IMG/VR virus record: IMGVR_UViG_3300029908_000004
Location: 124,001 to 188,000 of that record
Direction: 5' to 3' (one strand)
Length of the DNA stretch: 64,000 nucleotides
This document shows, piece by piece, positions 25,293-43,034 of the stretch; within the stretch, counting starts at the first letter, position 1, and each line of letters starts with the position of its first letter. Position numbers and translations under genes: made by a program. The notes under the pieces were generated by a model that saw only the letters and a list, made by a program, of their open reading frames with translations, did no database searches and was not told the DNA's origin.

Positions 25293-25781
25293 ATGAGCGA
25301 CGTAGATGTAGTCGACAACATTGTTGAGGCTAACGAAGCCGCAACACAAAAGAAGTTTTCAGATCCTTACGAGTTCCTAGCAACTATTAATGGATCCCCA
25401 AGTAAGGTTCAAATCGAAACTTGGAAGACACAAACCCCTAATAACAGATTGAGAGTGTTTACCCCAGATGGTGGTAAGCGTGTATTCATTGTAAGGGCCG
25501 TTGGGGCAATGGAACTACAACGCATTCAAAGCTCAATCCCCACCAATCTAGGAGCAAACCTTTCACAAGAACAACAAGCAGCTAAGGTAGAATTTGAATT
25601 ACAGCTGTTAATCGCTGCTCATTGTATTTTATGGACTAATGCTGCGTCAGATGGAAAGATGACTGCTGAGATGTTACGTACTGGTTCTGCTGGCCTACCA
25701 AGTACACTATTCAATCTCATAAGTTGGTTGTCTGATTTTATGGATCCAACTGCTTTTGAAGTTTTGTCTGCTGAGTTGTAG
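25293..25781 (+). CDS. Putative tail assembly chaperone
   Basis: 162 aa with an AAGGAG RBS, between the tube genes and the tape-measure-position gene. Confidence 0.5.
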   Translation: MSDVDVVDNIVEANEAATQKKFSDPYEFLATINGSPSKVQIETWKTQTPNNRLRVFTPDGGKRVFIVRAVGAMELQRIQSSIPTNLGANLSQEQQAAKVEFELQLLIAAHCILWTNAASDGKMTAEMLRTGSAGLPSTLFNLISWLSDFMDPTAFEVLSAEL

Positions 25782-25833
25782 AAATTATACTTGACTTCGA
25801 TTCATTAGGGTCTATGAAATAAGGAATAAGGAT

Positions 25834-25855
25834 GGTGGGTGTCTCAACACCCACC
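25834..25855. repeat. 9-bp intergenic hairpin
   Basis: GGTGGGTGT-CTCA-ACACCCACC. Confidence 0.65.
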
Positions 25856-25867
25856 TAATTACATACA

Positions 25868-26389
25868 ATGATTATTTATCAAGCGACATGGCCTGACGGC
25901 TATACTGTCAAGTGGCGCAACCTAACTTGGGCAGAATATCGTAGAATAGAACCATCATACCTAGGAGCCTCTTCTAGGTTTTCTTATCCTATGGGGGCTT
26001 ATTTAGATGTATACAAACTAGTGATGCTAGATGGGCCACTCCCACAATTTGTGCCAGCGGGAATAGTAGCATACGTTGCTATACAACAGCTAAGTACTAA
26101 CCCATTCAATGGTACCTATGATGATATAAAAGGTCAATTATATTTATCTAGACAGAGATTAGAATCTAGTTATCTAGAAACAGCGAAGTGCTTGATAGCT
26201 GCAGCATTTAAATATAGATTCGAAGAAATGGAAGATTGGGATCCAATAACTTTCTTTGATATGTTAGCAAGAGCAGAGAAGGTATTGGGCCGGCTAGCAG
26301 AACCAAATAACCCTAATGAAGTTAAAGCCCCATCAATTCCAGAAGATGTTAAAAGAGAAGCATTACATAGAAATAGAAGGAAAAAGTAA
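25868..26389 (+). CDS. Putative tail assembly chaperone 2
   Basis: 173 aa; stop overlaps the ATG of the giant gene (TAATG). Confidence 0.5.
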   Translation: MIIYQATWPDGYTVKWRNLTWAEYRRIEPSYLGASSRFSYPMGAYLDVYKLVMLDGPLPQFVPAGIVAYVAIQQLSTNPFNGTYDDIKGQLYLSRQRLESSYLETAKCLIAAAFKYRFEEMEDWDPITFFDMLARAEKVLGRLAEPNNPNEVKAPSIPEDVKREALHRNRRKK

Positions 26390-29300
26390 TGGCAAAAGCA
26401 CGGAAGCCTAAGAAGAATATGTTTATCCTAGATATTGAAACCTCCCACACTAATTGGGAAGAGCTCAATCGTCTAGAAGGAAAGTTTTCTATCAGAGGGA
26501 TCTTCGAAGCTTCCAAAGAAGGTGCTTACGGCACTTCAGCTTTTTCTACTGCCTTTGTTAATAACCAAATCCTTCAGATGCATATTGAAGAATCTAAGGC
26601 ATATAGGAAATTTTCTGCTGATGGATCTAAGGTATATAAGAAAGGTTCTGGTTATACAAAACTATTCCTAGATAAGAATCATATCCTACCTTATAGAGAT
26701 ATCGTTAAGAATGTTGAATTTCCTATATTCTTAGACAAGTTTTCTAATGACATTGCAGCAGATGCTTTAAAGTACGCCACTCTTACAGAGGAGCAACAGC
26801 TAAGAAGACTCTTCCAAGCTGTGCAAGGAAAATCTATAAAAGCTGGTGGTCCTATTCAGCTTGCTGGATGGAATGTAAAATATGACATTGCTTCTCTTAA
26901 AGCCTCTGCAGCTAGATACTCCTCTCTAAATAAATATGTAGAATTCTTTGATAAAGCCTATGCTACTAATAAGATACAGTTTGTAAGCTTAGAAGACGAG
27001 TTGTTTAAACAAGTATGGACGCATGCTTCGCAGAATCCTGACTTAATGCGTCATCTTACAGATAAGGCTCGTGCCAGAACATTTGATCTTACATTAGAAC
27101 TTAAGAGTTCTGAAGATTTAAAGAACGTTCCGGGTTGGAAAGCTTCTAAGATAGCTAGAATGCTAGGTCTTGGAGAAGAACTTCATCGTGCAGCCGCAGA
27201 TGTAGCATTAGAGAGAATGATATACGAGGCTGTAATTACAAACGGTCTGACTCTAGAGCACATCAAAGCGATGTATGGTGCTTGGAGAACCGAAGCATCT
27301 TCTATAAAAGAAGTAACAGAAGTTATCGGTGACATAAGACCACTAAATGGGTTTGCTTTACTAGCAGGAGCCGCCGCTGCAATAGCAGCGGGCTTAGCAT
27401 TCAGTACCAGATCCTCTAGACAGACTACTATTGTTGGTTTATCAGATAATGGTAAAGCCAAGGATTCCAGACACAAACACACCTCGTTTGGTTCTGGATG
27501 GCACGGACTAGGAGAAGATAATAGTAGCTTAAATTATAAAGCTCTTGGCGCAGCTGGCTTTGCTGCAGCAGGGTATTCCTATTTCCGTAAGGTTATCGTT
27601 CCAGGAAAAGGACCTTTCTCTGTAGATAAACTACACAGCTTTGTAAGTACATTAGAAGATTACAGCCCATTTAAAATTGGTAGAACTTTTGGTATTAGTC
27701 AATACATAAGTTCTTATACTACTCCTAGTAAATTACACGTTGGTTATAGTGAATTAGTAGGACAGGGTGGTAAATATACTGAGTTAGGTGAACATTTTGA
27801 TCGCCTATTTACTGGTTCTAATGTAGATTTACGTTCCCAAAAAGGGTTGAATTTTATAAGGACTGATTATGGTCCTTATATGGAACTTGAGGGATACGGA
27901 GGAGACGTCCGTGCCCGTTTTACAAAGCGTGGAAGTCTATCTAGTTCTAGTTATAGATACAACAAACCTCTTGAAAATGTTCCTGTAACTTTCCTAAAAG
28001 AGAGTACTCCTTGGGAAACTATTACAAAGAACTTTGGTCGCCTTCGTCATTCACAAGAACCAACTGGTTATAAAGGTGCTATCAGTGTTGGCGAAGAAGT
28101 AGAAGGTGTCTTCCAACCATATCTAGTTAATATAAAGAGTAGAGGCAAATTATTTAATTTCGCCGAAACTGCTAATAGAACAGCTCTTAGTCAAGCCGAA
28201 CGTGTACAGAGATTATTATCTGATATAGGGTTAGGATTAAAAGAAGGTACGTGGAATAAAGCTTTTCACGTCCCTATAATAGGTGAGGGTGGTTTAGTTA
28301 ACCAGCTTCTTACTAAGAGATTCGCTCCAGCAGCTCTATTAGTTGGATTAGCCCTTCCTTACATAGATTATAAAACTGGCCATTCTTTAAGCGGTATAGC
28401 ATTAGATACGTTCCAGCGCTTTAGATTAGCCCATGCTTCCCTTACTGATCATTTTCTGCGTGGTGTAACAGATAAATATGAACAGATTGTACCCGGTCCA
28501 CAGTACGGTCCATTAGCCTTACCAGTATCTGGAGCCTTTGTTGGTGGGGTACTTCAATACTCTAATGTATTAAGAACTAGATACACAAAGGGAGAAAAAG
28601 CAGCAGAGTTACTTCGTTCAGGAAGTAAATTCTTCTCCGCCCCCGGACAAAAGTCAATCTTAGGTATCCTAAACCGTGAGAATAAGGGTGCTGTTGGTGT
28701 AGCTATTGGACTAGCGCTAATGCTTCCCTTCATTCCGGGGATGATTGGGTCTAGGAAAACAAAGGAAGAACTACAACGGACATACTCTGGTGAGGATCCA
28801 GTAGAAATAAAAGCTGGTCGCTGGTGGGATATGGGAACCACAGCGTTAGAAGGTGGTCGTGTAAAGGAGTATCGCCCACACTGGTCTGTTCTATGGCGCG
28901 CACAAGCAGAGAAGAAGGCTTTATATGGATCAGAGAAAGAGTACTGGAGACATAACCCGATACTTCATCCATTACGCTGGTTAAGAGATCCTTATTTCCT
29001 AGAAGAAAAGCATTATGAGGATAGGCCATACCCAGAGACTTCACCTGCGTTTACTAATGTTCCATTAGTAGGACCACTATTAGCTTCTACTATTGGTCAA
29101 ATTGTAAAACCAATCAGGAAGATGCATCCAGAGTGGGATACAACTGACTATACATTAGGGTCAACTCGTCTAGAACCGAGAGGTCCTAAAGCATTACCAG
29201 CAGCAGAACCAACATCAGAATTCTCTTTAGGTGACACAGCTCAAAGATCAATTAAAGCTGCTACTGAATTCGTTGGATTGCCGGGCTTTATCGGGCGTAG

Positions 29301-31365
29301 CTTATGGAATAAAACTTTCCCTGGATATGGATCTATGGGTGAGAATGTAAAGTTCCAAGGTTCCCGACAAATGACTAATTATAGTCGTAAATACTACGAG
29401 CTAGAACTAGGTGCTGTATCTGGTGTAAGTCCTGACTTTGAATTATTTGGATATTCTGAACCTTTCCGTCGTTTCGTACAGAACGAAGGAAAGTTACTTC
29501 AGGCTAATAGTATTAAGAATAAAATGCCTTCTTGGCTTCCTGGAGAGGATTATTTTATTAACTTCAGAACAGGTGACCCTTATGTAAAGATTTCAACTGG
29601 ATTCGCTCGTCTGCCGGGTGAGGGTTATGCAGCTCTACACCCAGAACTAGAAGGTGTCAGTCCAGAGGATTACCCAGATATGGAGAAATTACGTATCTTA
29701 GGGGATGTAGCACCATATTCTAGAGAGTTTGCTATCTTCAAAGGAAAGGTTAGGAAGGACATCAGAGGAGATACAGAAAGTTTAGCTGAGTATGAGAGTA
29801 TTATGGCTCGCGCTAATAAGATGCGCAAATCAGTTATTCGGACAGAGGAGCAGAGGTTCTCAAAGGATGTAGAAGAAACCACTGGAACAGTAAAAGCTCT
29901 AGGCTCAGCTGGTGTAGAGTTAAATGAATATCCGGGTCGTATATTTAGAATGAGCGGCGTTTCTACTACTGCTGCAGATATGTCTGCCGTTGTATTATCA
30001 CAATATAATGATATGACGAAGGAGGATGCTGCTAAGGAAATAGATGTAAGAAGAGCTGAGCTAGATAAATTCTTATCAGATACTTTCACTGCTGGCACAA
30101 AAGTAACGGCTACTTTCCAGAAAGGGGCTTTAGATAAAGAAACTAATATACGATCTGTATTAGAAATAGATGGATTAAACATCAATAAAGCTATAGTTGG
30201 TGAGGGTTACGGTACCTACGATAAAGCTTCTGCTGGGGCTGAATGGCAAGCTATGTTCAATCCAGCAGAAAGATTACTAGGAAGGTACGCAGAAGAAGCC
30301 TCATTCGCTGAAGAAGCACCTTGGTGGAACCCCCTTAGATGGTTACCTACACCTTATCATACCAAGCTGTGGCAAGAACGTTCAGCGCTAGCTCAGTACG
30401 TAGATCAAGAAACTGTCGGAACTCGTATGCGTAGGTGGGATAAGCCGATTAAAGACTTCTTGGCTCCGTATTACCATGGGCTATTACATAGGGTAAGCGG
30501 AGAAGTATTTATTCCAGAGGCAACAGTAGAAAAGCGGAATTTAAATACTATGGTAGATATGTTAGATTATCTACGAGATTTGAATTTAGCTTCTACCGAC
30601 TCTGAGAGTCGTGGCAGGTATACTAGTAAGGCTAGTAGGACAGCTATAGGTGCAAATCTTACTGGGTCCACCACTTTCCTAGGCTCCACACTGCCTGATC
30701 GTGATACTAGATACTTCAAAGAATTTGTAAATTCTACTGACGATGAGGAAAGACAGAAGATACTAGATGTGGTGCCAGATGAAATGGCTAGAGCTTTAGA
30801 AGCTCAGTGGGCTGGTAAAGAGGCACAGATAGCAGAGTCTGAAGGCAAGGAGACTAATATACAGTTCTCTGGTGGTCGCCTTGTGAATAAAGAAGGTCTT
30901 GATCGTTTCAAGAAAGCAACAACAAAGCTCGATTATGGTGATTATGAAAGGTCCTTAGAGATATCTGATTTCTTCGCGAAGACTGGATTATCAGTTCCTG
31001 AATCAGATTCAGCGTTATGGGACCCAAACATTGATTATGAAGACGTAAAGCTAAAGATTATAGAGATGGAAGGTCGTGATTACCATGACTTCAATATATT
31101 TGATGATAGAGCTTCATTACTTTGGCGTAAACCTTATGTAGATGGTGCAGTACAAGAGTTAACGTCTGGAAACGATCGTTCGGAAGAACAGATTAGAAGA
31201 CAAGTTGAGCGACTTATGCTAGCAGCTAAGAATCCTAATGCTAACCCTTTCACTAGTGGTCACCCATCTCAAGATAGTAGGGGTAGCGCTACCATTAATG
31301 TAAACGTGGATCAGACTGAAGAGTTGCTAAAAGATATGCGACGTAATCCGGAGAATTATGATTAG
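26389..31365 (+). CDS. Giant tape-measure-position protein with an N-terminal DEDDh 3'-5' exonuclease and a possible degenerate SNase-like domain
   Basis: ExoI ILDIET (D15, E17), ExoII AGWNVKYDI (D166) and ExoIII HRAAAD (H266, D271). Several G/A-rich hydrophobic segments follow. IFRMSGVST...LEIDGLNINKAIVGEGYG resembles a thermonuclease fold. It follows the tail chaperones. Confidence 0.7.
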   Translation: MAKARKPKKNMFILDIETSHTNWEELNRLEGKFSIRGIFEASKEGAYGTSAFSTAFVNNQILQMHIEESKAYRKFSADGSKVYKKGSGYTKLFLDKNHILPYRDIVKNVEFPIFLDKFSNDIAADALKYATLTEEQQLRRLFQAVQGKSIKAGGPIQLAGWNVKYDIASLKASAARYSSLNKYVEFFDKAYATNKIQFVSLEDELFKQVWTHASQNPDLMRHLTDKARARTFDLTLELKSSEDLKNVPGWKASKIARMLGLGEELHRAAADVALERMIYEAVITNGLTLEHIKAMYGAWRTEASSIKEVTEVIGDIRPLNGFALLAGAAAAIAAGLAFSTRSSRQTTIVGLSDNGKAKDSRHKHTSFGSGWHGLGEDNSSLNYKALGAAGFAAAGYSYFRKVIVPGKGPFSVDKLHSFVSTLEDYSPFKIGRTFGISQYISSYTTPSKLHVGYSELVGQGGKYTELGEHFDRLFTGSNVDLRSQKGLNFIRTDYGPYMELEGYGGDVRARFTKRGSLSSSSYRYNKPLENVPVTFLKESTPWETITKNFGRLRHSQEPTGYKGAISVGEEVEGVFQPYLVNIKSRGKLFNFAETANRTALSQAERVQRLLSDIGLGLKEGTWNKAFHVPIIGEGGLVNQLLTKRFAPAALLVGLALPYIDYKTGHSLSGIALDTFQRFRLAHASLTDHFLRGVTDKYEQIVPGPQYGPLALPVSGAFVGGVLQYSNVLRTRYTKGEKAAELLRSGSKFFSAPGQKSILGILNRENKGAVGVAIGLALMLPFIPGMIGSRKTKEELQRTYSGEDPVEIKAGRWWDMGTTALEGGRVKEYRPHWSVLWRAQAEKKALYGSEKEYWRHNPILHPLRWLRDPYFLEEKHYEDRPYPETSPAFTNVPLVGPLLASTIGQIVKPIRKMHPEWDTTDYTLGSTRLEPRGPKALPAAEPTSEFSLGDTAQRSIKAATEFVGLPGFIGRSLWNKTFPGYGSMGENVKFQGSRQMTNYSRKYYELELGAVSGVSPDFELFGYSEPFRRFVQNEGKLLQANSIKNKMPSWLPGEDYFINFRTGDPYVKISTGFARLPGEGYAALHPELEGVSPEDYPDMEKLRILGDVAPYSREFAIFKGKVRKDIRGDTESLAEYESIMARANKMRKSVIRTEEQRFSKDVEETTGTVKALGSAGVELNEYPGRIFRMSGVSTTAADMSAVVLSQYNDMTKEDAAKEIDVRRAELDKFLSDTFTAGTKVTATFQKGALDKETNIRSVLEIDGLNINKAIVGEGYGTYDKASAGAEWQAMFNPAERLLGRYAEEASFAEEAPWWNPLRWLPTPYHTKLWQERSALAQYVDQETVGTRMRRWDKPIKDFLAPYYHGLLHRVSGEVFIPEATVEKRNLNTMVDMLDYLRDLNLASTDSESRGRYTSKASRTAIGANLTGSTTFLGSTLPDRDTRYFKEFVNSTDDEERQKILDVVPDEMARALEAQWAGKEAQIAESEGKETNIQFSGGRLVNKEGLDRFKKATTKLDYGDYERSLEISDFFAKTGLSVPESDSALWDPNIDYEDVKLKIIEMEGRDYHDFNIFDDRASLLWRKPYVDGAVQELTSGNDRSEEQIRRQVERLMLAAKNPNANPFTSGHPSQDSRGSATINVNVDQTEELLKDMRRNPENYD

Positions 31366-32846: not shown

Positions 32847-32852
32847 TTTCAT

Positions 32853-32913: not shown

Positions 32914-35900
32914 ATGACTATAATCAGTTCTACAGTACTGTCTGTTGCAAACTTAATAAAACGTCATCATGGCGTATTAGCAGCTTCTGCTATCGTCCCA
33001 TTCTTCTATGACAGCGAAGATCGTGGCTATTTCAGGACAGCGATGATTACTACCCCAATACTGTTCGCTGGGGCAGAGATGTTACCAAAGCTATTCAGCA
33101 CGGCTAAGACAGAAGCTGAGTCTGTTTTCCATGCTACTATGAGTACTGCTAAGAATCCTATATTTAATACAGCACATAATATTGTTGGTTCTGATTTATC
33201 TAAGCTTGCAGAGGATGGTACTGTTGGTATACGAACTGTTGAAGAAGCTCAAGCTAGATATTCTATGGGATTAGCAAAGGCTCGACCAATAGAAGACATA
33301 AATAACTTATACAGTAGAGCCACAGGTCTTCTTAAGGCAACTGATCAGAACAGAAGAATGATGTCACAAGCAGTTGTGTCTTCAGCACAGGATGCTATGA
33401 CGCCTTATGATTGGATTAGTACACCAAAAGTTCTAGAAGGGTTGCTTGATAAAGATAATAGAACCAACGTATCTATGTCAGACGACAAAATGTTAGAGAT
33501 TGCTGAGTTCTTCAAGGGCAGAGGAGATACCAGATTCCCAAGAAGATTACAAAGTAATATGGATAGAATAGAAGGGTTAGTAGATCAAGGTGCTTTTGTA
33601 CCAGCAGGGGCCACCTTCTTTCCACCAGATGTAGTCACTAACTTACAAGTTGGCTCGTGGTCAGAGGCTATTGAAGAGAAATTGAGTAATGCCGGAGCAG
33701 GTGGAGTTAGCAATATCCTAAAGAATAGGTCTAACCTTGATAAGTTAAACCTTCAGGTAAAATTAGTTTCTCAAGGAGTTATAGACGGCAGCACCGCTGA
33801 TGCTTCCTATATTGATTTTGTCAGAACAATGAAAGATGTAGAACAGAGTATACGTATACCTATTCCAGATGCTAATGGGGCTGTTCGTATTGGTCCATAC
33901 ATAGGAACAGCTCGCTCTGTTATGGATTATGATGGAAAGATATATCGTATTGATGAGTGGGTAGCTAAGATGGTTACCGAAGGTAATGACTATACTGAAA
34001 AACAATTGATGGGGGATATTAATCGTGCTGTATTCTTCACAGCTCACGACCCAGCAGATACAGAGGCGATATACTCTCAAGCTGGATCTAGATTTGGCAA
34101 GAATTTCGCCGGAGAAAATCAGGTTAGATTAAAATCACAAGCTGCTGTATTAACTTCTCTACCTAGATTCAAAATGGGTGATGAGGCTGTAAGCTTTGAA
34201 AAGTTAGACCCACTATTTCAGTCAGATTTCGAGAGGAAATTAATCAATAGTGGAACTGTGTCTATGATGGGGCCGGAGTCTGCTTGGGGTAATAGAGTTT
34301 ATCAATTGCGTAAGATGGAAGATTTTGCTATGGGCGGAGTGGCAGACGTAACAAAGCAGGATTGGAACTATCGTTCTCTATCTAAAGGTGTATCGTACGA
34401 ATTCGTACAGAATAAGAATGGACTAGATCTTAAACCAAAGGTCTCGACTACAGCTTATGAAGAGTTCCTTGGTACCAAGGAAGTACCAGAATTCAATATG
34501 AGACTTGCTGGTATTTCTCCTCAAGAGAAGACACTCCTTGGTGATTTTGGTATGTATAAGACTTGGGAGGAAGCACAAGCTTATAAGCCATTGTTTATAG
34601 AACGAGCTATGGAAATGAATATCTCTCCAGCAAAAGCTGAAAAAGCTTTTAATGACATAGAACATTTCTATAGAAGTAAGACAAAGCTTGATAAATTTGG
34701 TAAGCCCAAACTAGGGTATGGTGCTACTATATTCGAACAAATTGGTAGCCTTGGTGAGACCGATATCATCATATCAGACGCGCTAGCGAAGACTGGTAGA
34801 CTAAAGTATACGACCACTTATGAAGTAGATCAGATGCATTTCAATCCTGAGGATTGGGTTGGTAAAGATGTCGAAGATGATTTCAAATTTGGTACTAGAC
34901 AAAATAAAGTTGTGAGCCCTGATTCTGGTGGAAAGATACTTTCTACCAAGGCTGCAGATGAGTCTACTTATCATATAATAATGGAACATTATCAAGGTAT
35001 GGACGCAGCGAAACATGATACTTTCGGTGTAAAGGGAGAATTCCATACAGGTACCTATCAAGGTAATTTCCAGACTATGCTTTCAGCAATAAATGATTTC
35101 AGAAAAACAACAAGAACGGGAGATGTAATAGATAAATATACCGTTAACGGTATTGCTGATTGGACTTATGCTCAAAATAAGATGGACCCAATGTTGCTTC
35201 GTATGTCTATAGCAGAGGATACCCTACATAATATAAGTTCACGAAATAAAGCTGTTGGAGAAGAATTAATAAGTTCTGCTACAGAACAACTAGCTAAAGT
35301 TGGTGTAGACTATACTGATGGACAAATGATCTTCCAGCACGAGTTTATTCGTAAGCAATTTGCCTCTAGAGAAGCTAAGATCGCTAATATGGAGGAACTT
35401 AACAGCGTTATAGATAAGATTATGGCTGATGCTACAGCTTCTATAAGAAGCAAGAAGGGTCTTGGGTATAAAGTCTATCAAGGGTGGTATAATAAAACAG
35501 GTAGTGGTATAACAGATGACGTACAAGCAGGTAAGAGTCTTGAAGCTTATATGCTACGTAATGGTGTAAATGTAAACGTTAGAACTTGGGCTCATGCTAA
35601 TATTAATCTTCCAGAACATGCCACAGTAACTCATGATTACGATACTTTCTCAAACCTAGGGGATAAGAGAGTTATGGCTGCTGAGCTTCGGAATCGCCTA
35701 CAAACTGTTGGCGAAGGCGACCCAGAAATGAGTATGCTATACGGTCAATATCTTCAAGATAATGATTACACCAAACCTATGCGTGAAAGTGAAGATGTAG
35801 TAGTAGATTTAGATAAAGCTTTCTTAGGTAGCGCAAAGCTATCAAGACCTGAGGGGCGTCATGGAACTATATTTGATCCATCCGATTCAAGATATAAGGA

Positions 35901-37839
35901 AAACTTTAGAGTAAAATACCTAGACAAAGAGGGTAAACCACAGTTCATACCTGTCCCGGGGACTGATGCTTATATGTCTATAAGCCCAGAATATAATAAA
36001 GAGAAAGGCGTAGGTTACCAAACTCATGACTGGCAAAATCAATTACATAATATTTATAACGAGGAAAAAGCTGGTAATATCGAAGCTAGAGACGCGTTAA
36101 TAGAGGGTATTAAACGAAAAGGCGGTTCAACCCAAGGAATAATAGATGCTATTCACGATGACCTATTAACAGGGAAGAATAGTGCTTGGAGACCACGTAG
36201 CTATGATCCATTAGGTAGATCTGGATACATCACGACCCGTGGAGGAACCGCTGAACCTTTCATAGTAGGTATCTCCTCAGAAGAATTAAAAGCGCTACCC
36301 GCCAGTATACAACAAGGTATAGAAAAGCAAGGATTTGGCACTGCTTTACTCGGACGCCAGCCTTATGGAGATGCGGTTGCAGTTAAAGTAATAGAAGATA
36401 AACATTTAAAAGGAACCAAGTTCTTTAGTATCAATGAAATAGTTCGTATGTTAATAGGTGCTGATGATGACCTTGATCCAGCCAACCTACATTATTATGC
36501 TGCTGGTTCAACAGGTGAAGCAGAAGCTCTAAGGGTAATGGCACCCGGTGGTAGACAAGCTAGAAGAGTAGAAAACTTCCGTGCGTTAATGGGCTCAGCT
36601 GACGAAAGTGCCTCAGTAAGAAATCCGGTACAAAAAGACTTAGCTGAGAGACTAGCTAAGAAACTTGCGCTAATGTCTAATCTAGAAGCCGCTGTAGCTA
36701 ATAGGTCTGCAGCAGAGGCTACTGGTACGTTATCCCTTGCTTCTGGTAGAATGTTAGCTCACATAGAGAGATCTCCAGCATTTAAGAATAATGAGGTAGT
36801 GCGTGATTATTTAACAGATATAGCAAAAAGATTACGTCAAGCGCCTATTGATGCTCGTAAGACTCAGACTTTGTTCAATAAACAAATGGCTATGAATATA
36901 GCAAATGAAGTTAAGGAATCATTTAAACTTGGCACGAGTGGCGCTGAAGGTAGTATAAAACAAGGTGCTGAAATGTTAAGGCGGGCTGTATTAAAGGAAG
37001 GTATTCTAGTTCCAGTTGATTGGAATCCTGTAATGGGAAAGAGATTTAATATTCCACAACCCCTTCCTGAAGAAATAGCAAAAGGTGGTGGTAAAGTTAA
37101 TGCAGCTGCTAGATGGTTAGAAACGCCCGAAGGAATAACAGCCAGTGAAGACTTAATGAAAGGTGCCACTAGAGAAACTGAGAATTGGGTAGATATAACA
37201 AGTGGTGTTCTTACTGGTGGAAAGAAAGTTACTAGAGAGATATACAATAAGTTAGAAGCTAGTGTTCCACCAACATTCCGTAAAGCATTTATGGCTATGA
37301 GTAGCGCAGCCGATTTAGGAACTATCAATACAAAAGCTGCGGCTGGTGCTTCTATGAGATCTATCGCTTCAACTGTTACCGAACTCTTCCGTGGAGATTC
37401 AGGTAAAGTTCTTGGTGTAGGTTTAGCTATTGCTGCTGGGGCTGGTTTACTATTTAATAGACCTAGGAATCCAAAGCAATTAGCAACAGCTAAGATGTCT
37501 AGACCAAGTGGGCATAGACCGGAAGAACGTATAGGAACTGACGGAGCAATACCCGGAGAGCCAATTACGGGGTCTATGGCACCAACTAATCCTCCTAAAT
37601 CAGTTAGATATGTAGAAAAAGGAGTGAGAACTACAATGGTGGCTCCAATGAATAGAACCTCAAACGTAGAAGCTACGATTGTAACTGACAGTGCTAGACA
37701 AGGTGCTGACTATTCTAGAGCTGCTGCTATGATGTCTAGTAATGGTGATGTAAACGCCACGATTAATTATAAAGTAAATAATAAGTTAGGAAGTCTCAGA
37801 AATAGAGAACGCATCAGAGAGATAAGAGACGAACAATAA
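32914..37839 (+). CDS. Putative single-chain two-barrel (DPBB) DNA-dependent RNA polymerase in the tail module, likely virion-associated
   Basis: beta-like motifs: GETDIIISDAL (E615) and KHDTFGVKG (K700, K707). beta'-like motifs: LLTGKNSAWR..LGRSGYIT..IVGIS, LLGRQP, IGADDDLD (D1184, D1186, D1188), EAEALRVM and QAPIDARK. Hydrophobic segments occur at both termini. Confidence 0.78.
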   Translation: MTIISSTVLSVANLIKRHHGVLAASAIVPFFYDSEDRGYFRTAMITTPILFAGAEMLPKLFSTAKTEAESVFHATMSTAKNPIFNTAHNIVGSDLSKLAEDGTVGIRTVEEAQARYSMGLAKARPIEDINNLYSRATGLLKATDQNRRMMSQAVVSSAQDAMTPYDWISTPKVLEGLLDKDNRTNVSMSDDKMLEIAEFFKGRGDTRFPRRLQSNMDRIEGLVDQGAFVPAGATFFPPDVVTNLQVGSWSEAIEEKLSNAGAGGVSNILKNRSNLDKLNLQVKLVSQGVIDGSTADASYIDFVRTMKDVEQSIRIPIPDANGAVRIGPYIGTARSVMDYDGKIYRIDEWVAKMVTEGNDYTEKQLMGDINRAVFFTAHDPADTEAIYSQAGSRFGKNFAGENQVRLKSQAAVLTSLPRFKMGDEAVSFEKLDPLFQSDFERKLINSGTVSMMGPESAWGNRVYQLRKMEDFAMGGVADVTKQDWNYRSLSKGVSYEFVQNKNGLDLKPKVSTTAYEEFLGTKEVPEFNMRLAGISPQEKTLLGDFGMYKTWEEAQAYKPLFIERAMEMNISPAKAEKAFNDIEHFYRSKTKLDKFGKPKLGYGATIFEQIGSLGETDIIISDALAKTGRLKYTTTYEVDQMHFNPEDWVGKDVEDDFKFGTRQNKVVSPDSGGKILSTKAADESTYHIIMEHYQGMDAAKHDTFGVKGEFHTGTYQGNFQTMLSAINDFRKTTRTGDVIDKYTVNGIADWTYAQNKMDPMLLRMSIAEDTLHNISSRNKAVGEELISSATEQLAKVGVDYTDGQMIFQHEFIRKQFASREAKIANMEELNSVIDKIMADATASIRSKKGLGYKVYQGWYNKTGSGITDDVQAGKSLEAYMLRNGVNVNVRTWAHANINLPEHATVTHDYDTFSNLGDKRVMAAELRNRLQTVGEGDPEMSMLYGQYLQDNDYTKPMRESEDVVVDLDKAFLGSAKLSRPEGRHGTIFDPSDSRYKENFRVKYLDKEGKPQFIPVPGTDAYMSISPEYNKEKGVGYQTHDWQNQLHNIYNEEKAGNIEARDALIEGIKRKGGSTQGIIDAIHDDLLTGKNSAWRPRSYDPLGRSGYITTRGGTAEPFIVGISSEELKALPASIQQGIEKQGFGTALLGRQPYGDAVAVKVIEDKHLKGTKFFSINEIVRMLIGADDDLDPANLHYYAAGSTGEAEALRVMAPGGRQARRVENFRALMGSADESASVRNPVQKDLAERLAKKLALMSNLEAAVANRSAAEATGTLSLASGRMLAHIERSPAFKNNEVVRDYLTDIAKRLRQAPIDARKTQTLFNKQMAMNIANEVKESFKLGTSGAEGSIKQGAEMLRRAVLKEGILVPVDWNPVMGKRFNIPQPLPEEIAKGGGKVNAAARWLETPEGITASEDLMKGATRETENWVDITSGVLTGGKKVTREIYNKLEASVPPTFRKAFMAMSSAADLGTINTKAAAGASMRSIASTVTELFRGDSGKVLGVGLAIAAGAGLLFNRPRNPKQLATAKMSRPSGHRPEERIGTDGAIPGEPITGSMAPTNPPKSVRYVEKGVRTTMVAPMNRTSNVEATIVTDSARQGADYSRAAAMMSSNGDVNATINYKVNNKLGSLRNRERIREIRDEQ

Positions 37840-40800
37840 TGAGTATAACAATTAGTAACCCACAACTAGACGATCCAGAAAGTGGTTATTTTCGTATTGG
37901 AAATGTGATATTAAAGATTCCACCAGAGGATATTAATATCCATAAGACCTCTAATGTAGACGAACTTACTGCTTTAAGAGCTAAGTTCCCATACATAAAC
38001 GAAAGTGGATTCGCTCGTTGGGATGTGACGGTATCTTGGACAGCAGTATATGAGGAAAACCCTCAGAATTATTCTGATTCCCCAAGTTTCTCAGAGAATG
38101 ATGACCCACATTGGGCTCAATGGGAGGATGTACGCACCATTGTAGCTATGATGAAAGCTGCTCCATTTGTAGAAGTGGAGAATGATCTTGTACGTTCAGT
38201 TATTTCATCGAGGAATGACGAATCTTCATATTCAGGAATAGCTGTTACTGATAGTACTAAATATGTTCGTTTAGCTTTTGCTCTCCGTCAATTTAAGGTA
38301 TCAACTTCAGAGGATATAGTAGATGGATTAAAGTGTCAACTAGTTATGACATTATTTAATTATCTTCCATTTACCAAAGACTTCGCTTATGTAGGCACTG
38401 GTGGTTTGCCGGTAGACGCCACTCAATCAGATGCTTTTAAGAAGTATTTGAATGAATGGAAAGAAAATAATTTAGATGCTCCACAAGAAGGGGAATACAG
38501 CCCATGGCAGGAGCAAGACCCGGAAGATACGAGTTTTATTTGGCGGACTTATATGCCACAACCAGGGCTCCCTGTTGCTGCTCCAAGCGATTTAGATGTT
38601 GATGAATGGAAGTGTGACCATTTCACAGATGATATGACTTATAGATATAAGGAGAATAGATTACATCTAGATTCTTCAGATGGCTCAAGCTCTGAGGAAG
38701 GCTTATTTCCTACCAATCTCTCCGTTGTATTTGTAAATCAGTTTGCTCAATTACCATTAGCTAATTATCAATATCCTACATATCAACATATAGGCCCAGC
38801 AACTACCGTTATCTCTATGGGTATGGAATCTGATAGCGCTGAATCCCTAGGGGTAACTGGTTTAACTGGAATGATAAATGAGTTGAAGAAACAATTCTTA
38901 CAATTCCGTTCTTGGAAATCTGCTGCTAGTATTTATAATAGGCAGGCTATCCTAGTTCGTAATCAGTTCCTTAATATGCTAGGAGTATGGGGGCTTAACG
39001 TAGCAGAATTTGATGTATCTACTATACAGAATTCTGCTGGTAGATTATCTTGTACCCTCATGGCTAGACAATATGAAAACTACTATGAGTTATTAGATCC
39101 ATTTACTGTATATGGTAGTGACCATTATACACAACAATTGAGTAGTTATATTAGGTCCCCAGCCTTAACTGCTGGGCTAACTCAAGCTGAGCAATCAGGA
39201 ATGCAAAAGCTTGTAGCTTTTCGTAACGCTTGGAATGGCTACGACGATAAATATTTAGCGAATCTTTTATTATCTACAGACCCAACAACAGCGTCTACTT
39301 TAAAGACATTGCCTAGTATACCAATGCCTAGTGGGGTATCGTTGACCCCTACTGAGCAGGCTAATCTATTCTTAACACTTAAGGAAGAAAGCCCATTAAG
39401 TGCTACTGTAAGTAGGCTGCCCGGAACGGCTGGTTATGGTAGTACACCCTTCGATAGCAGTTATTGGCCTTGGTTAGCCGCTAAGAACAGCCCTGGATAC
39501 GTAATGTCTTATACAGACTATTGGGTGTTAACACGACTAAATACTTTGTCTAGTCAGAATGATCCAACTAGGTATCAAGCAGATTTAGCTATCCAACAGA
39601 AATATGACCCACAAGTAACCCAAGCCATGAAAGATCAGATATGGCAGAAGGCATTTGAACTATTGGCAGCAAATGACCGAGTAATGTCGAATAACTTGGA
39701 TCAAATAGCTCGTTCGAAATCTTTCAAAGACTCTCTTGATTCATCGACACAAGCACAAGGTTTATATAGTCCCGGGTCTGACCCATCTAATGGTAAACAT
39801 GGATGTTATAGGGACTTAGGGATTTATGATGGGGACCCGGCTGAATATTTCATTGATTATTCCAATGTGCTATTAACAACAGCTGCCCAGCAAATGGAAC
39901 AGAATTTATCTGTAATGTTAACTGGATTCAAAGCTTTTAATACAAAAAATCAGCAGGGTCAGGGAACAACAATACCAACTGATCTTTCAGATTTTGGTAT
40001 ACAAGAAGGTAATGTTTCTGGTATGCTCCTACGTTCTAATATACCAAAATATAGTATGAGGGGATGTTTCCCAACATTCAAATTATTTCTTATGGAGGAT
40101 AAGAACACTAGTATTTTCTATTGTTATGATAATTTCTATTCTTATGCCTCTGTAATTGATATGGAAATGATTAAGTATAGGGACAAGCCTGATACTGCTG
40201 TGATAAGAATTACAAACCTATCTGGTATGTTGTCATATAGATTATTCGATAACTCTGTACAAGGTAAGAGAGAATGGGAATTAAGCAATGATGTTAAGGT
40301 CCCTACTTCCCTTGACGGGTCACCAACGGTTAACCCAGGAGGTATGCCGGGTGCTGTAATGGCTGGTAGAATGGGCAATCATAACTATCAAGAGGGTCAA
40401 GGTAGTTTAAACTCCCCCGGAGAAACGTTCGTTACAAACCAACCTAAGGTGCCATTGCGGTATTACCCATTACAAACTGGATCAAAGATACAAGTACGTC
40501 TTGGTTATTCTAATAATCCAGACGGGTTATACCCAGTATTTGTTGGACAAGTCACACAAATAGATGAAGAAGACGGGATTATAACTCTTGTAGCTCAAAG
40601 CTATTTGACTGAGTTGGATACCTCTATGTCAGACGAAGTTAGCAGCGATGGTTTTTCTGTGCCCGGTCTTGTTGGTAACATAATTAATAGTGTTACTGAC
40701 GCTGCTATACGGCTAGTTAAATTCCAGCCAATGATGGCATTTCGTGATTTATGGGCGGGATTAACTTACGTTAGAGCTCCAGCTTACGGCGGATGGCTGA

Positions 40801-43034
40801 ATTTATCTGGGGATGGTGACGCTTCCAATGTAATAAAAGCGATTCTTAAGATAAGTCAGGCAAGACATTTTGGAAAATGGCAGATTGGTGGTTTACCTGA
40901 TCGTTATGTAAAAGGGTTTACATGGAGTGACACGCTTGCTGCCTTAGGAGGCACTGGACCAATTGCTTCGACACTTAATAATAGTTATGATAGGTCTGGA
41001 GCTAACATATTAGTTAATCATTTGGTTAATTATAGTGGAACAGAAGTTGTTGGTAAGTTCCCAGTTACTAGAAGTTGGACATTCGAACAGCCCGGTTGTA
41101 CAAAGCCTGTTTATCATATTAAAGGGGGAACAGCACGCACACCTTGGTTCTATATCAAAGATGTAGGACGTAGGTACCCAGATTACGTTCTAGCAGTTAG
41201 ACAATATGGGTTCCCATATCAGGCAAATGCTACTTGTATATTTGGACATCCTAATGATTTCTATTATTCTAGAGATTTAATCTTAGGGGAACTTACTGCA
41301 ATGAAGCTACAGCCTGCTGTAGCTAAACCTATCTTTGCAGATTGGTGGGATCACCAACAAGGTAGGTCTCAAACAGCAGCCATGCTATATAACTATCTCA
41401 TACCAGTGTTACCCGGCGTGCAGCCTGGGGACACTTATGTAAACACATTTATGAACAAGATAGATAGTACAAAAGACCCTAATGTTTATTTCCAACAATT
41501 AGACTCTCTAAATACTATGATAAACAGAACTGGAAACGATTTATTATCATGGTGGCCAGGGGTACAAAACTATCAGATGCAGTCTTTTAGAACAGAGGTG
41601 AATTATCTTCGTAACTCACTTGAATATTATTTAACTCTAAAGATAAACGGGACTATCGGTAAAGTTAATGAGGCGTTACGTATTCAACCAGTTCGTAGAT
41701 GGAATTACATAGACCACGAATCCATAATCCACAACGGTATAAAATTATCTGATAAATTCTTCAATACAATAAAGTTATCTGATGACACTCTATGTATAAA
41801 TGAGATGATACCAAGTCATCACCAACGGGTATTAGACGCTGACGAGCTTGTGGAGTCTGTGGATAAGAATTTAAAAAGTGGTGGTAATGAGCCAATGCGT
41901 CTAGCAACTATCCAGAGCTTCTTAAGAGAAGAATGTGGAAAGATGTATTATGGTGAATTAATTATTAAAGGCACACCAGAAATTGAGCCTTGGGATGTTG
42001 TAGTTATAACAGACCCAGCAACTGGTATGATGGGTCCCGTAGAAGTAGACTCCGTAATTCACACATTCAATCAGGAAATGGGGTTTATTACTATTATTAA
42101 GCCTAGAGCGTTGATAATAGTTAATGATGCTGCTTCCATGGGGTTATTGAATGGATATCGTTGGGCTTGGGCTAACGCGACCCAGATAATAAATGGGTAT
42201 AGTCAAGCTTATGGAGACGCTACAACGGCCATTGGTGTAACTACACCAACATTACTGGGAGTAGTAGCTGGTGGAACGGCAGCAGCCATCTTTGGCGGTC
42301 CTATAGGGGATGTTGTAGCAGTAATGGTTGCTGGTAGGGCATTTGCTACAGCTATAAATATCTCTACAAGAATGAATCTATGTATGGTGTTTCCACTTAT
42401 GAGATTTGGTAACCCTTGGGTGGGTGGTTTACAAGGATATCGAGCAGGTGATATAGTATATTGGTTAAAGGATCATTGGATACAATTTTATACTGATGAA
42501 ATAGCTCCATTAATGAGCACTTGGCAGGAAATAAAACAAAGCATAACACCATCTTTGCAGGACCCAACTATGACACCAAATCCTGTTCCCCCTATTTCAC
42601 CTAGACCACGATCTAAAATATCTAGTGATAAACAAGCAATCATAGCATTAATTCGTAAAGTAGCTGCTAGACCCGAAAACCAAGCGATGCCTGTAGACTT
42701 AGCCATAGCTCAGGCACAGCAAGAATCTACTCTTAACCCAAATGCTATAGGTCCAATGACTAAATGGGGGAAAGCTATAGGGTTATTTCAATTACTACCA
42801 AGTACAGCTGCTGGTTTACATGTAGACCCTTATGTTCCTGAACAGAATATACAGGGTGGTATAACGTATATGTTGCAATTATATGATAAGTTTCATACTT
42901 GGCCATTAGCACTAGCCGCTTACAATATGGGGCCGGGAGCTCTCCAGCACCATCTAGATAAGGGCACGCAATGGCCAACACAGACACAAACTTACGTATC
43001 TAATATTATGGGGCATTGGAATCAGAACTCATAA
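37839..43034 (+). CDS. Baseplate hub/tail-tip protein with a C-terminal lytic transglycosylase (SLT)
   Basis: Hub-type KIQVRLGYSNNPDGLYPVFVGQVTQI...ITLVAQS and GELIIKGTPEIEPWD. SLT motifs are QQESTLNPNA (E1629), AIGLFQLLPST, NIQGGITYM and ALAAYNMGPG. Confidence 0.82.
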   Translation: MSITISNPQLDDPESGYFRIGNVILKIPPEDINIHKTSNVDELTALRAKFPYINESGFARWDVTVSWTAVYEENPQNYSDSPSFSENDDPHWAQWEDVRTIVAMMKAAPFVEVENDLVRSVISSRNDESSYSGIAVTDSTKYVRLAFALRQFKVSTSEDIVDGLKCQLVMTLFNYLPFTKDFAYVGTGGLPVDATQSDAFKKYLNEWKENNLDAPQEGEYSPWQEQDPEDTSFIWRTYMPQPGLPVAAPSDLDVDEWKCDHFTDDMTYRYKENRLHLDSSDGSSSEEGLFPTNLSVVFVNQFAQLPLANYQYPTYQHIGPATTVISMGMESDSAESLGVTGLTGMINELKKQFLQFRSWKSAASIYNRQAILVRNQFLNMLGVWGLNVAEFDVSTIQNSAGRLSCTLMARQYENYYELLDPFTVYGSDHYTQQLSSYIRSPALTAGLTQAEQSGMQKLVAFRNAWNGYDDKYLANLLLSTDPTTASTLKTLPSIPMPSGVSLTPTEQANLFLTLKEESPLSATVSRLPGTAGYGSTPFDSSYWPWLAAKNSPGYVMSYTDYWVLTRLNTLSSQNDPTRYQADLAIQQKYDPQVTQAMKDQIWQKAFELLAANDRVMSNNLDQIARSKSFKDSLDSSTQAQGLYSPGSDPSNGKHGCYRDLGIYDGDPAEYFIDYSNVLLTTAAQQMEQNLSVMLTGFKAFNTKNQQGQGTTIPTDLSDFGIQEGNVSGMLLRSNIPKYSMRGCFPTFKLFLMEDKNTSIFYCYDNFYSYASVIDMEMIKYRDKPDTAVIRITNLSGMLSYRLFDNSVQGKREWELSNDVKVPTSLDGSPTVNPGGMPGAVMAGRMGNHNYQEGQGSLNSPGETFVTNQPKVPLRYYPLQTGSKIQVRLGYSNNPDGLYPVFVGQVTQIDEEDGIITLVAQSYLTELDTSMSDEVSSDGFSVPGLVGNIINSVTDAAIRLVKFQPMMAFRDLWAGLTYVRAPAYGGWLNLSGDGDASNVIKAILKISQARHFGKWQIGGLPDRYVKGFTWSDTLAALGGTGPIASTLNNSYDRSGANILVNHLVNYSGTEVVGKFPVTRSWTFEQPGCTKPVYHIKGGTARTPWFYIKDVGRRYPDYVLAVRQYGFPYQANATCIFGHPNDFYYSRDLILGELTAMKLQPAVAKPIFADWWDHQQGRSQTAAMLYNYLIPVLPGVQPGDTYVNTFMNKIDSTKDPNVYFQQLDSLNTMINRTGNDLLSWWPGVQNYQMQSFRTEVNYLRNSLEYYLTLKINGTIGKVNEALRIQPVRRWNYIDHESIIHNGIKLSDKFFNTIKLSDDTLCINEMIPSHHQRVLDADELVESVDKNLKSGGNEPMRLATIQSFLREECGKMYYGELIIKGTPEIEPWDVVVITDPATGMMGPVEVDSVIHTFNQEMGFITIIKPRALIIVNDAASMGLLNGYRWAWANATQIINGYSQAYGDATTAIGVTTPTLLGVVAGGTAAAIFGGPIGDVVAVMVAGRAFATAINISTRMNLCMVFPLMRFGNPWVGGLQGYRAGDIVYWLKDHWIQFYTDEIAPLMSTWQEIKQSITPSLQDPTMTPNPVPPISPRPRSKISSDKQAIIALIRKVAARPENQAMPVDLAIAQAQQESTLNPNAIGPMTKWGKAIGLFQLLPSTAAGLHVDPYVPEQNIQGGITYMLQLYDKFHTWPLALAAYNMGPGALQHHLDKGTQWPTQTQTYVSNIMGHWNQNS

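What the first reader, a model, noticed from the sequence alone, without database searches (positions are those of the whole stretch)
26389..27260. Intact DEDDh exonuclease fused to the N-terminus of the tape-measure-position protein
Seen: D15, E17, D166, H266 and D271 in ExoI/II/III spacing, in one uninterrupted frame with ~1370 further aa containing G/A-rich hydrophobic segments. Established: the gene after the tail chaperones is normally the tape measure protein, which is ejected during infection and can carry peptidoglycan hydrolases; an exonuclease head is not a typical cargo. Inference: a nuclease delivered with the genome, for end processing, host nucleic-acid degradation, RNAP proofreading or counter-defence.
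Basis: partly seen in the sequence, partly recalled or inferred. Interest (0 to 1): 0.75.

Follow-up and report, generated by a model that had tools for sequence, protein, structure and literature searches.

The report
Exonuclease head on giant phage virion protein
A 215-kb phage from peat carries an apparently active DNA/RNA-trimming enzyme (a DnaQ/RNase T-type 3'-5' exonuclease) fused to the front of a giant tail-module virion protein, an old fusion that many relatives have since lost, so it looks like optional enzyme cargo rather than a building block.

Summary
ORF 26389..31365 (+) is one uninterrupted 1658-aa frame with D15, E17, D166, H266 and D271 as described.

**The domain.** A 16-sequence profile of the N-terminal domain hits RNase T (E 2e-5) with all three Exo motifs in register. 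An AlphaFold model (pLDDT 78) superposes on E. coli Exonuclease I and Pol III epsilon (Z 14.8 and 14.6). The pentad is intact in 23 of 26 homologues that have the domain.

**The carrier.** It is a homologue of Bacillus phage 0305phi8-36 gp145, a virion protein by mass spectrometry. That gene lies between the tail chaperonins and the gene assigned as tape measure (gp146). So this is the first of two giant genes after the chaperone-position genes, and probably not the tape measure. Its core models as a compact fold containing an SNase-like OB domain.

**The fusion.** It is ancestral and vertically inherited, with congruent domain and core trees. It has been lost many times, and the nearest relative keeps only a remnant. 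No stand-alone copy was found. The phage has its own Pol A proofreading domain.

**Best reading.** Dispensable enzyme cargo, tethered by a hydrophobic helix and an invariant linker. It probably acts on free 3' ends early in infection. Delivery and substrate are untested.

**Verdict.** New variant of a known kind.

The parts
26389..31365 (+). Whole gene: 1658-aa giant tail-module protein, homologue of 0305phi8-36 gp145 and Acinetobacter phage ME3_35
26389..27288 (+). DEDDh (DnaQ/RNase T-like) 3'-5' exonuclease domain, aa 1-300, with a low-confidence insertion at aa 71-106
   Evidence: Profile vs PDB gives RNase T at E 2e-5. AF2 model pLDDT 77.6, pTM 0.78. VIA Z 14.8 to ExoI and 14.6 to Pol III epsilon, 167/175 aa at rmsd 2.4. 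Foldseek, AFDB and ESM Atlas top hits are all DEDD exonucleases.
26431..26439 (+). ExoI motif, D15-x-E17
   Evidence: D15 invariant, E17 present in 25 of 26
26872..26886 (+). ExoII motif, N162-x3-D166 (GWNxxYD)
27184..27201 (+). ExoIII motif, H266-x4-D271 (the h of DEDDh)
27340..27408 (+). Hydrophobic G/A-rich helix TM1, aa 318-340
27409..27507 (+). Nearly invariant linker RxxRQTxIxGLxDxGxAxxxRHxxTxFGSGWxG, aa 341-373. The ~1300-aa homologues begin just after it.
28366..30588 (+). Conserved core, aa 660-1400, shared with 0305phi8-36 gp145 and ME3_35. Compact mixed alpha/beta model with a hydrophobic helix at aa 764-789.
   Evidence: (pLDDT 85.3, pTM 0.83)
29866..30318 (+). SNase/thermonuclease-like OB-fold sub-domain, aa ~1160-1310. 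Catalytic residues not evidently conserved.
25293..26389 (+). Two small ORFs (162 and 173 aa) in the position of the tail chaperonins gp143 and gp144. Assigned by position only.
32914..37839 (+). Second giant ORF (1641 aa) in the position of 0305phi8-36 gp146, the assigned tape measure. C-terminal hydrophobic segment at aa 1495-1517.
37839..43034 (+). Baseplate hub-like giant protein with a C-terminal SLT transglycosylase

Best explanation
The gene encodes a giant tail-module virion protein of the 0305phi8-36 gp145 family. Its first ~300 residues are a catalytically competent DnaQ/RNase T-type DEDDh 3'-5' exonuclease. A hydrophobic helix and an invariant basic/glycine linker tether this domain to the conserved core, which includes an SNase-like OB fold and further hydrophobic helices. 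The exonuclease is an ancestral but dispensable accessory module. Most likely it is enzyme cargo carried in the virion and released at the cell envelope or cytoplasm at the start of infection, following the logic of 'polyvalent proteins'. There it would remove nucleotides from free 3' ends of single-stranded DNA or RNA near the DNA entry site. Shown: the domain identity, the intact active site, the fusion, its ancestry and repeated loss, and the homology of the carrier to a virion protein verified by mass spectrometry. Inferred: packaging of this particular protein, delivery, substrate and benefit. It is neither the replicative proofreader nor, by homology, the tape measure.
For: Domain: the RNase T profile hit has three motifs in register. 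The fold matches ExoI and epsilon at Z 14.6-14.8. The profile retrieves canonical PF00929 proteins. The pentad is intact in 23 of 26 homologues at only 17-28% domain identity. Carrier: tblastn and BLASTP match gp145 and ME3_35, with synteny of sheath, tube, tube paralogue, gp142-like, two small ORFs, this gene, second giant, then hub with SLT. Fusion conserved: 16+ full-length homologues and more distant 1800-2230-aa giants carry the domain at the N-terminus in the same locus. Accessory nature: ~55 homologues lack it with unchanged synteny and no separate exonuclease gene. The closest relative keeps only the ExoI remnant plus TM1 and linker. Parsimony puts the domain at the root, with 7 changes minimum or 16 under loss only. 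The exonuclease tree is congruent with the core tree. Not the proofreader: the genome has a Pol A with its own PF01612 exonuclease. Two structural homologues carry the name 'Large polyvalent protein associated domain'. The sequence is real: independent contigs agree.
Against: No direct evidence that this protein, or its N-terminus, is in virions or enters cells. No cultured phage in the 50,697-genome collection has the domain. The two cultured relatives, 0305phi8-36 gp145 and ME3_35, lack it. A folded 35-kDa domain and a compact 740-aa core would not obviously fit a tail-tube lumen, so the location in the virion is unknown. The basic residues lie on the C-terminal side of TM1. By the positive-inside rule this would put the exonuclease on the non-cytoplasmic side, if the helix inserts conventionally. 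Pfam PF00929 does not reach threshold on the single sequence. Three of 26 homologues have lost catalytic residues.
Confidence: 0.5

Rival explanations
1. Genome-end handler. The exonuclease sits next to the leading end of the packaged DNA. It holds or trims the genome's 3' end and pilots it through the channel formed by the hydrophobic helices, rather than attacking host nucleic acids.
For: The gene lies in the tail module immediately before the tape-measure-position gene. The carrier has several hydrophobic helices and an SNase-like OB fold that could bind nucleic acid. In canonical tape measures the N-terminus points toward the head and the DNA end (established knowledge of lambda, T5 and SPP1 tails, from memory, not tested here).
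Against: Most close relatives with the same tail module do without the domain, so it cannot be an obligatory step of DNA delivery. There are no data on genome ends.
Confidence: 0.2
2. One reading: the protein is the tape measure itself, and the exonuclease is cargo on the ruler, comparable to the muralytic domains found in some tape measures.
For: It is the first gene after the two chaperone-position ORFs and has G/A-rich hydrophobic segments. In 0305phi8-36 the tape measure assignment to gp146 rests mainly on correlation with tail length.
Against: The homologue gp145 is not the assigned tape measure. A second giant ORF with a C-terminal hydrophobic segment follows here and in all relatives. 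The core is well conserved across very distant phages, whereas tape measures diverge fast. The core models with high confidence as a compact mixed alpha/beta fold.
Confidence: 0.15
3. Relic or non-catalytic domain. The exonuclease fold is kept as a structural or binding module, or is decaying, with no nuclease role.
For: Repeated loss. Three of 26 homologues have substitutions in catalytic residues: P0044 D271N, P0063 E17K plus H266R, and P0100 degraded. The nearest relative has an internal deletion.
Against: All five catalytic residues, plus N162 and E134, are kept in 23 of 26 sequences whose domains are only 17-28% identical overall. That is the signature of selection on catalysis.
Confidence: 0.1
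4. Artefact or two products: a mis-assembly, or a separate exonuclease gene read through into the structural gene.
For: None found beyond the existence of ~1300-aa homologues.
Against: The sequence is identical on a second IMG/VR contig and in Logan contigs of other peat runs, with no joints. There is no stop, and no Met codon between aa 300 and 460. Sixteen or more homologues share the same continuous architecture. Short exonuclease-only hits are contig-edge fragments.
Confidence: 0.03

Closest known systems
DnaQ-like DEDDh 3'-5' exonucleases (RNase T, Pol III epsilon, Exonuclease I, TREX1/2, oligoribonuclease; Pfam PF00929)
   Same: ExoI DxE, ExoII NxxxD and ExoIII HxxxxD motifs are in register. 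The fold is RNase H-like and superposes on epsilon over 167 of 175 residues. The invariant E134 aligns with E92 of E. coli RNase T in the HMM alignment.
   Different: The domain is about 300 aa rather than about 180. It has a ~150-aa ExoI-ExoII spacing filled by helical and disordered insertions. It falls below the Pfam threshold. It forms a small clade, 42 representatives at E<=1e-3 among 1.84 billion, found almost only as the N-terminal head of giant phage proteins.
Bacillus phage 0305phi8-36 gp145 and Acinetobacter phage ME3_35 (virion structural proteins of unknown function)
   Same: Homologous core (aa ~670-1610 here) and the same locus between the chaperonin genes and the tape-measure-position gene. 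gp145 is a virion protein by mass spectrometry.
   Different: Neither has the exonuclease head. No function has been described for the family, and there is no Pfam family.
Polyvalent proteins of phages and conjugative elements (Iyer et al. 2017, PMC5512222)
   Same: A giant polypeptide combines unrelated enzymatic and nucleic-acid-related domains with virion structural parts. Nuclease modules vary between homologues: DEDDh head, SNase-like fold, Vsr/MTES_1575 insert. Two structural homologues are named 'Large polyvalent protein associated domain-containing protein'.
   Different: That paper's text mentions no DnaQ-type 3'-5' exonuclease, SNase or tape-measure context. No LPD or zincin peptidase domain was detected in this protein. 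Delivery is untested.
Tape measure proteins carrying enzymatic domains (for example muralytic motifs in T5 pb2 or mycobacteriophage Tmp; from memory)
   Same: An enzyme is embedded in a giant tail-module protein that has hydrophobic segments.
   Different: Here the enzyme is a nuclease rather than a cell-wall hydrolase. By homology the carrier is the gene before the tape measure.
SNIPE, a host membrane-bound nuclease acting at the phage DNA injection site (PMC13190303)
   Same: Conceptual mirror only: a membrane-tethered nuclease positioned where phage DNA enters, associated with the tape measure.
   Different: SNIPE is host-encoded, defensive and unrelated in sequence. No homology was tested or claimed.

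Membership tests
DEDDh (DnaQ-like) exonuclease superfamily | ExoI motif D-x-E | tested here: met
   D15 and E17 align with the DVET motif of RNase T. D15 is invariant and E17 is present in 25 of 26.
DEDDh (DnaQ-like) exonuclease superfamily | ExoII motif with conserved Asp (N-x3-D) | tested here: met
   N162 and D166 align with HNxxFD of RNase T. D166 is present in 25 of 26.
DEDDh (DnaQ-like) exonuclease superfamily | ExoIII motif H-x4-D (h subtype) | tested here: met
   H266 and D271 align with AHxAxYD of RNase T. Present in 23-24 of 26.
DEDDh (DnaQ-like) exonuclease superfamily | RNase H-like alpha/beta fold | tested here: met
   AF2 model pLDDT 77.6. VIA Z 14.8 to ExoI and 14.6 to epsilon, 167/175 aa at rmsd 2.4. 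ESM Atlas PF00929 clusters reach TM 0.78 by hit.
DEDDh (DnaQ-like) exonuclease superfamily | Pfam PF00929 score above the gathering threshold | tested here: not met
   No Pfam hit at E<=0.1 for the single sequence. No PF00929 match at E<=1 anywhere in the genome. Membership rests on the profile and the fold, so this is a divergent clade.
DEDDh (DnaQ-like) exonuclease superfamily | Metal-dependent 3'-5' exonuclease activity | not testable with these tools
   Needs a recombinant domain with D15A/E17A controls.
Tape measure protein | Gene directly downstream of the tail chaperone pair | tested here: inconclusive
   It directly follows two small ORFs in the chaperonin position. Those ORFs have no detectable homology or paralogy. 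A second giant ORF also follows.
Tape measure protein | Homology to, or positional equivalence with, an assigned tape measure | tested here: not met
   It is the homologue of gp145. The tape measure of 0305phi8-36 is assigned to gp146.
Tape measure protein | Extended, mostly alpha-helical rod-like structure | tested here: not met
   The core, aa 660-1400, models as a compact mixed alpha/beta fold with pTM 0.83. Regions 376-660 and 1400-1658 were not modelled.
Tape measure protein | Protein length proportional to tail length | not testable with these tools
   No particle is available for this metagenomic phage.
0305phi8-36 gp145 family | Sequence homology of the core and conserved synteny | tested here: met
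   BLASTP E 3e-25 to 2e-10 in four colinear segments to gp145, and E 1e-53 to ME3_35. Synteny shown.
0305phi8-36 gp145 family | Presence in purified virions | not testable with these tools
   Known only for gp145 itself, from the GenBank note.
Polyvalent proteins (Iyer et al. 2017) | Two or more domains of disparate activity in one large polypeptide of a phage | tested here: met
   DEDDh exonuclease plus SNase-like OB fold plus hydrophobic helices. Homologues add Vsr/MTES_1575.
Polyvalent proteins (Iyer et al. 2017) | LPD or other signature domains, and zincin-like processing peptidase | tested here: not met
   None in this protein at E<=0.1. Only the names of two structural homologues point there.
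Polyvalent proteins (Iyer et al. 2017) | Injection into the host together with the DNA | not testable with these tools
   Inference only.
Staphylococcal nuclease (SNase) family, for aa ~1160-1310 | OB-fold of SNase type | tested here: met
   Foldseek probability 1.0 to SNase. TNase-like AFDB clusters. VIA Z 8.9 to SN-like extended Tudor domains and 7.0 to SNase.
Staphylococcal nuclease (SNase) family, for aa ~1160-1310 | Catalytic and Ca2+-binding residues (D21, R35, D40, E43, R87) | tested here: inconclusive
   In the HMM alignment E43 and R87 face non-conserved positions. The N-terminal half was not aligned. PF00565 was not detected in any of 41 members. Probably non-catalytic.

The most novel reading that the evidence does not exclude
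A phage-borne, membrane-tethered 3'-5' exonuclease is injected ahead of, or together with, the genome. It works at the DNA entry site as a counter-defence or end-processing enzyme. For example, it could degrade host single-stranded nucleic acids with free 3' ends (guide RNAs, retron-type DNA, signalling oligonucleotides), or tailor the incoming genome end. It would define a new class of virion-delivered nuclease effectors restricted to an uncultured jumbo-phage lineage.
Probability: 0.25. Interest if true: 0.8.

Novelty: new variant of a known kind. Interest (0 to 1): 0.6.

Why it matters
Virion-carried enzymes act before any phage gene is expressed, so they shape the first seconds of infection. 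Known examples are RNA polymerases, cell-wall hydrolases and anti-restriction proteins. A DnaQ-type exonuclease as the head of a giant tail-module protein has not been described in the literature I could search. Here it defines a small, deeply conserved clade found almost only in this architecture. Its pattern, ancestral and under selection for catalysis yet repeatedly discarded, is typical of conflict-related accessory functions. It gives a clean comparative system: sister phages with the head, without it, and with a remnant. It also gives a first functional handle on the uncharacterised gp145 family of jumbo myophages.

Tried and rejected
- **Single-sequence family scans.** Pfam and PHROGs on the whole protein and on aa 1-314 gave nothing for the N-domain.
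- **Phage genome collection.** Megablast and tblastn against 50,697 phage genomes found no match for the exonuclease domain. Only the core hit eight jumbo-phage records, six distinct phages.
- **Cultured relatives.** hhalign of the domain profile against the N-termini of 0305phi8-36 gp145 and ME3_35 found no domain there.
- **Relocated exonuclease gene.** I wanted to scan whole genomes of the short-form phages for a relocated exonuclease gene, but their records are not held. Only the ±6 kb flanks could be checked, and they were negative.
- **The search for related loci.** With the alignment it failed because no stretch was conserved enough. With the single protein it returned only the same phage.
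- **Pfam on the core.** Scans of 41 core segments and six distant homologues, including gp145, gave no family.
- **ESM Atlas by features.** It gave only a weak SNase lead, which was then confirmed by fold.
- **Chaperone identity.** The two upstream ORFs show no homology and no paralogy.
- **Replicative proofreader idea.** Rejected, because a Pol A with its own exonuclease domain exists.
- **Literature.** Searches for virion or tape-measure-linked exonucleases found no precedent.
- **Stand-alone exonuclease hit.** P0091 is a contig-edge fragment.
Full report
**Observation**

The window is the structural module of a 215,291-bp virus record. The record carries 30 tRNA genes, and CheckV rates it complete. 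ORF 26389..31365 (+) is one uninterrupted 1658-codon frame.

D15, E17, D166, H266 and D271 are present in the contexts FILDIETSH, GWNVKYDIASL and HRAAADVALE. The start codon overlaps the stop of the upstream ORF (TAATG) and follows a GAAGGA stretch. Hydrophobic G/A-rich segments lie at aa 316-342 and 764-789, with weaker ones at 385-400 and 891-909.

The sequence is not an assembly accident:
- A second IMG/VR contig is 100% identical over 7125 bp.
- At least 24 peat or permafrost metagenome runs hold the sequence.
- A Logan contig of one run spans the whole ORF with no differences, and pieces from another sample cover the exonuclease part. No joints were seen.

**The N-terminal domain is a DEDDh exonuclease**

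Single-sequence Pfam and PHROGs scans find nothing, and PF00929 finds nothing in the genome. A profile built from 16 homologous N-termini (alignment A2) gives a clear answer:
- It matches RNase T in the PDB at E 2e-5, with ExoI (DxE), ExoII (NxxxD) and ExoIII (HxxxxD) aligned in register.
- Against 1.84 billion representatives, its weaker hits are canonical 180-210-aa PF00929 exonucleases.

An AlphaFold model (pLDDT 77.6, pTM 0.78) has one disordered insertion at aa 71-106. Its top Foldseek hits are all DEDD exonucleases. With VIA-align it superposes as follows:

| Target | Z | Detail |
|---|---|---|
| E. coli Exonuclease I | 14.8 | |
| Pol III epsilon | 14.6 | 167 of 175 residues, rmsd 2.4 Å |
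| TREX, RNase T, Cas2-DEDDh | 12-13 | |

Among 26 homologues with the domain, the five catalytic residues are intact in 23. The domains are only 17-28% identical to this one. N162, E134 and L62-Q63 are also (nearly) invariant.

The clade is small and divergent: 42 representatives at E<=1e-3. Its ExoI-ExoII spacing of ~150 aa is unusually long.

**The carrier protein**

The rest of the protein is homologous to Bacillus phage 0305phi8-36 gp145 and Acinetobacter phage ME3_35. The GenBank record notes gp145 as "identified as virion protein by mass spectrometry".

Gene order here matches those phages:

| Window coordinates | Product |
|---|---|
| 19456.. | tail sheath |
| 22097.. | tail tube |
| 22871.. 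| tube paralogue |
| 23923.. | gp142-like protein |
| 25293.. and 25868.. | two small ORFs in the chaperonin position |
| 26389.. | this gene |
| 32914.. | second giant ORF |
| 37839.. | hub with SLT transglycosylase |
| 44561.. | Baseplate J |

In 0305phi8-36 the tape measure is assigned to gp146, the gene after gp145. The two small upstream ORFs have no detectable homology or paralogy, and they are chaperones by position only.

A second AlphaFold model covers aa 660-1400 and was built from 41 sequences (pLDDT 85.3, pTM 0.83). It is a compact mixed alpha/beta fold, not a rod. Its only recognisable part is an SNase/thermonuclease-like OB fold at aa ~1160-1310. SNase E43 and R87 face non-conserved positions there, and PF00565 is not detected. 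It is therefore probably non-catalytic.

The best structural homologues are uncharacterised viral giants. Two of them are named [quoted passage not shown]. The family has no Pfam model.

**Architecture between head and core**

After the exonuclease comes a hydrophobic helix (aa 318-340). A nearly invariant linker, RxxRQTxIxGLxDxGxAxxxRHxxTxFGSGWxG (aa 341-373), follows. The ~1300-aa homologues start immediately after this motif.

**Distribution and history**

Of 88 homologues in the word-indexed search, about 55 are ~1300 aa and lack the first ~375 residues. Sixteen carry the head fused, in the same locus. More distant 1800-2230-aa members of the same core family also have an N-terminal DEDDh-like domain.

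Short-form loci keep the same synteny. They leave no room for, and show no trace of, a separate exonuclease gene within ±6 kb. No complete stand-alone protein of this clade was identified in the exhaustive search. The one short hit whose contig was checked is a contig-edge fragment; the other short hits (97-238 aa) were not checked.

The closest relative is P0002, 76% identical in the C-terminal half. It keeps an ExoI remnant (GIFIRDVESS), TM1 and the linker, but has lost aa ~20-310. An HNH gene lies nearby.

I built a FastTree of 1208 core columns from 81 sequences (P0054 and P0066 were left out). It places exonuclease-bearing proteins in all basal lineages and scattered in the crown. Fitch parsimony reconstructs presence at the root with 7 changes, and a loss-only count gives 16.

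The tree of the exonuclease domain (23 sequences; P0076, P0091 and P0093 left out) recovers the same clades as the core tree. The head therefore appears to have been inherited vertically and lost many times. Both trees are midpoint-rooted FastTree trees, and some deep nodes are weakly supported.

**Mechanism**

Shown:
- a catalytically competent-looking DEDDh domain under selection;
- its permanent fusion to a protein family known to be in virions;
- its dispensability.

Also shown: the phage has a family A DNA polymerase with its own PF01612 proofreading domain. The head is therefore not the replicative proofreader.

Inferred: the head is accessory enzyme cargo that travels with the virion protein. 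It would act as a metal-dependent 3'-5' exonuclease on free 3' ends at or near the DNA entry site early in infection. This is the logic proposed for polyvalent proteins (PMC5512222). That paper mentions no DnaQ-type exonuclease, SNase or tape-measure context.

Three uncertainties remain:
- The location of the gp145 family in the particle is unknown.
- A folded head and core would not obviously fit a tube lumen.
- The charge distribution around TM1 would, by the positive-inside rule, place the head on the non-cytoplasmic side.

Rivals, with my confidence in each:
- a genome-end holder or trimmer (0.2);
- a true tape measure with cargo (0.15);
- a non-catalytic relic (0.1);
- an artefact or two products (0.03).

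**Comparison and novelty**

The domain is a divergent member of the DEDDh superfamily. Motifs and fold are met and the Pfam threshold is not. The carrier is a member of the gp145 family, not of the tape measures by the tests available. The whole protein works like a polyvalent protein, but it lacks that group's signature LPD and peptidase domains.

No cultured phage in the 50,697-genome collection has the head. Literature searches found no virion- or tape-measure-linked DnaQ-type exonuclease. A host membrane nuclease acting at the injection site, SNIPE (PMC13190303), is a conceptual mirror only.

**Verdict**

I rate it a new variant of a known kind (virion-borne enzyme cargo on giant phage proteins), with interest 0.6.

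Noticed in passing
window 31380-32444 (+): A stand-alone ClpB-D2/ClpX-like AAA+ ATPase (PF07724 E 1e-32 plus ClpB_D2-small) sits inside the tail module, between the gp145-like gene and the tape-measure-position gene. It is conserved there in close relatives (L003, L004, P0002 locus) and absent in more distant ones (L005-L007). An unfoldase next to two giant virion proteins might help load them. This is pure speculation.
   Followed up: partly
window ~29185 (aa ~933 of the ORF); homologues P0002, P0048, P0057, P0058, P0060, P0062, P0064, P0065, P0067, P0068, P0075, P0112: About a dozen homologues carry an in-frame ~100-110-aa Vsr/DUF559 plus REase_MTES_1575 endonuclease domain at this position, which is a long surface loop in the core model. 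Distant homologues carry inteins or LAGLIDADG domains (P0083, P0086, P0107). These could be selfish insertions or additional nuclease cargo; this was not resolved.
   Followed up: partly
window 29866-30318 (+): An SNase/thermonuclease-like OB-fold domain lies inside the conserved core. It is closest by VIA to the non-catalytic SN-like scaffolds of extended Tudor domains. Catalytic residues do not appear to be conserved.
   Followed up: partly
window 27409-27507 (+): A nearly invariant linker motif RxxRQTxIxGLxDxGxAxxxRHxxTxFGSGWxG follows TM1. The short homologues begin exactly after it, and the remnant-bearing relative P0002 keeps it. It could be a processing or docking site.
   Followed up: no
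L003 11772-12620; L004 11485-12306: Close relatives encode a papain-like (Peptidase_C1) or trypsin-like protease between the ~135-aa gene and the second giant gene. This window has no gene there (32846 to 32914).
   Followed up: no
proteins P0110 (830 aa) and P0103 (3541 aa): The same exonuclease clade also occurs, weakly matched, fused to a protein-kinase-like domain (P0110: exonuclease at 47-234, kinase at ~400-760) and inside a 3541-aa giant (P0103: 486-685).
   Followed up: no
window 22097-22807 and 22871-23920 (+): PHROG phrog_9206 is labelled 'major head protein'. Here, however, it matches the homologues of 0305phi8-36 gp140 and gp141, annotated tail tube and tube paralogue (BLASTP E 1e-34 and 9e-19). 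The label is probably misleading. The real major capsid protein candidate is 5101-6420.
   Followed up: partly
genome G000:C1:1427-2131 and 4392-5399 (minus strand; outside the window): The family A DNA polymerase is split over two open frames ~2.2 kb apart. The exonuclease and N-terminal part lie in a 440-aa frame and the polymerase C-terminal part in a 332-aa frame. This suggests an intervening element.
   Followed up: no
genome G000:C1:24058-65367 (outside the window): Thirty tRNA genes, all on the minus strand, lie in a ~41-kb stretch.
   Followed up: no
window 11799-16490 (+): A 1563-aa protein with three fibronectin type III repeats (PF00041, E 6.5e-20) lies in the head-to-tail region. 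It has no PHROG match.
   Followed up: no
window 61100-64000: After the last large + strand ORF, G+C rises to 0.51, against ~0.40 elsewhere. Only small ORFs remain, mostly on the minus strand. There is no Rfam match at gathering threshold.
   Followed up: partly
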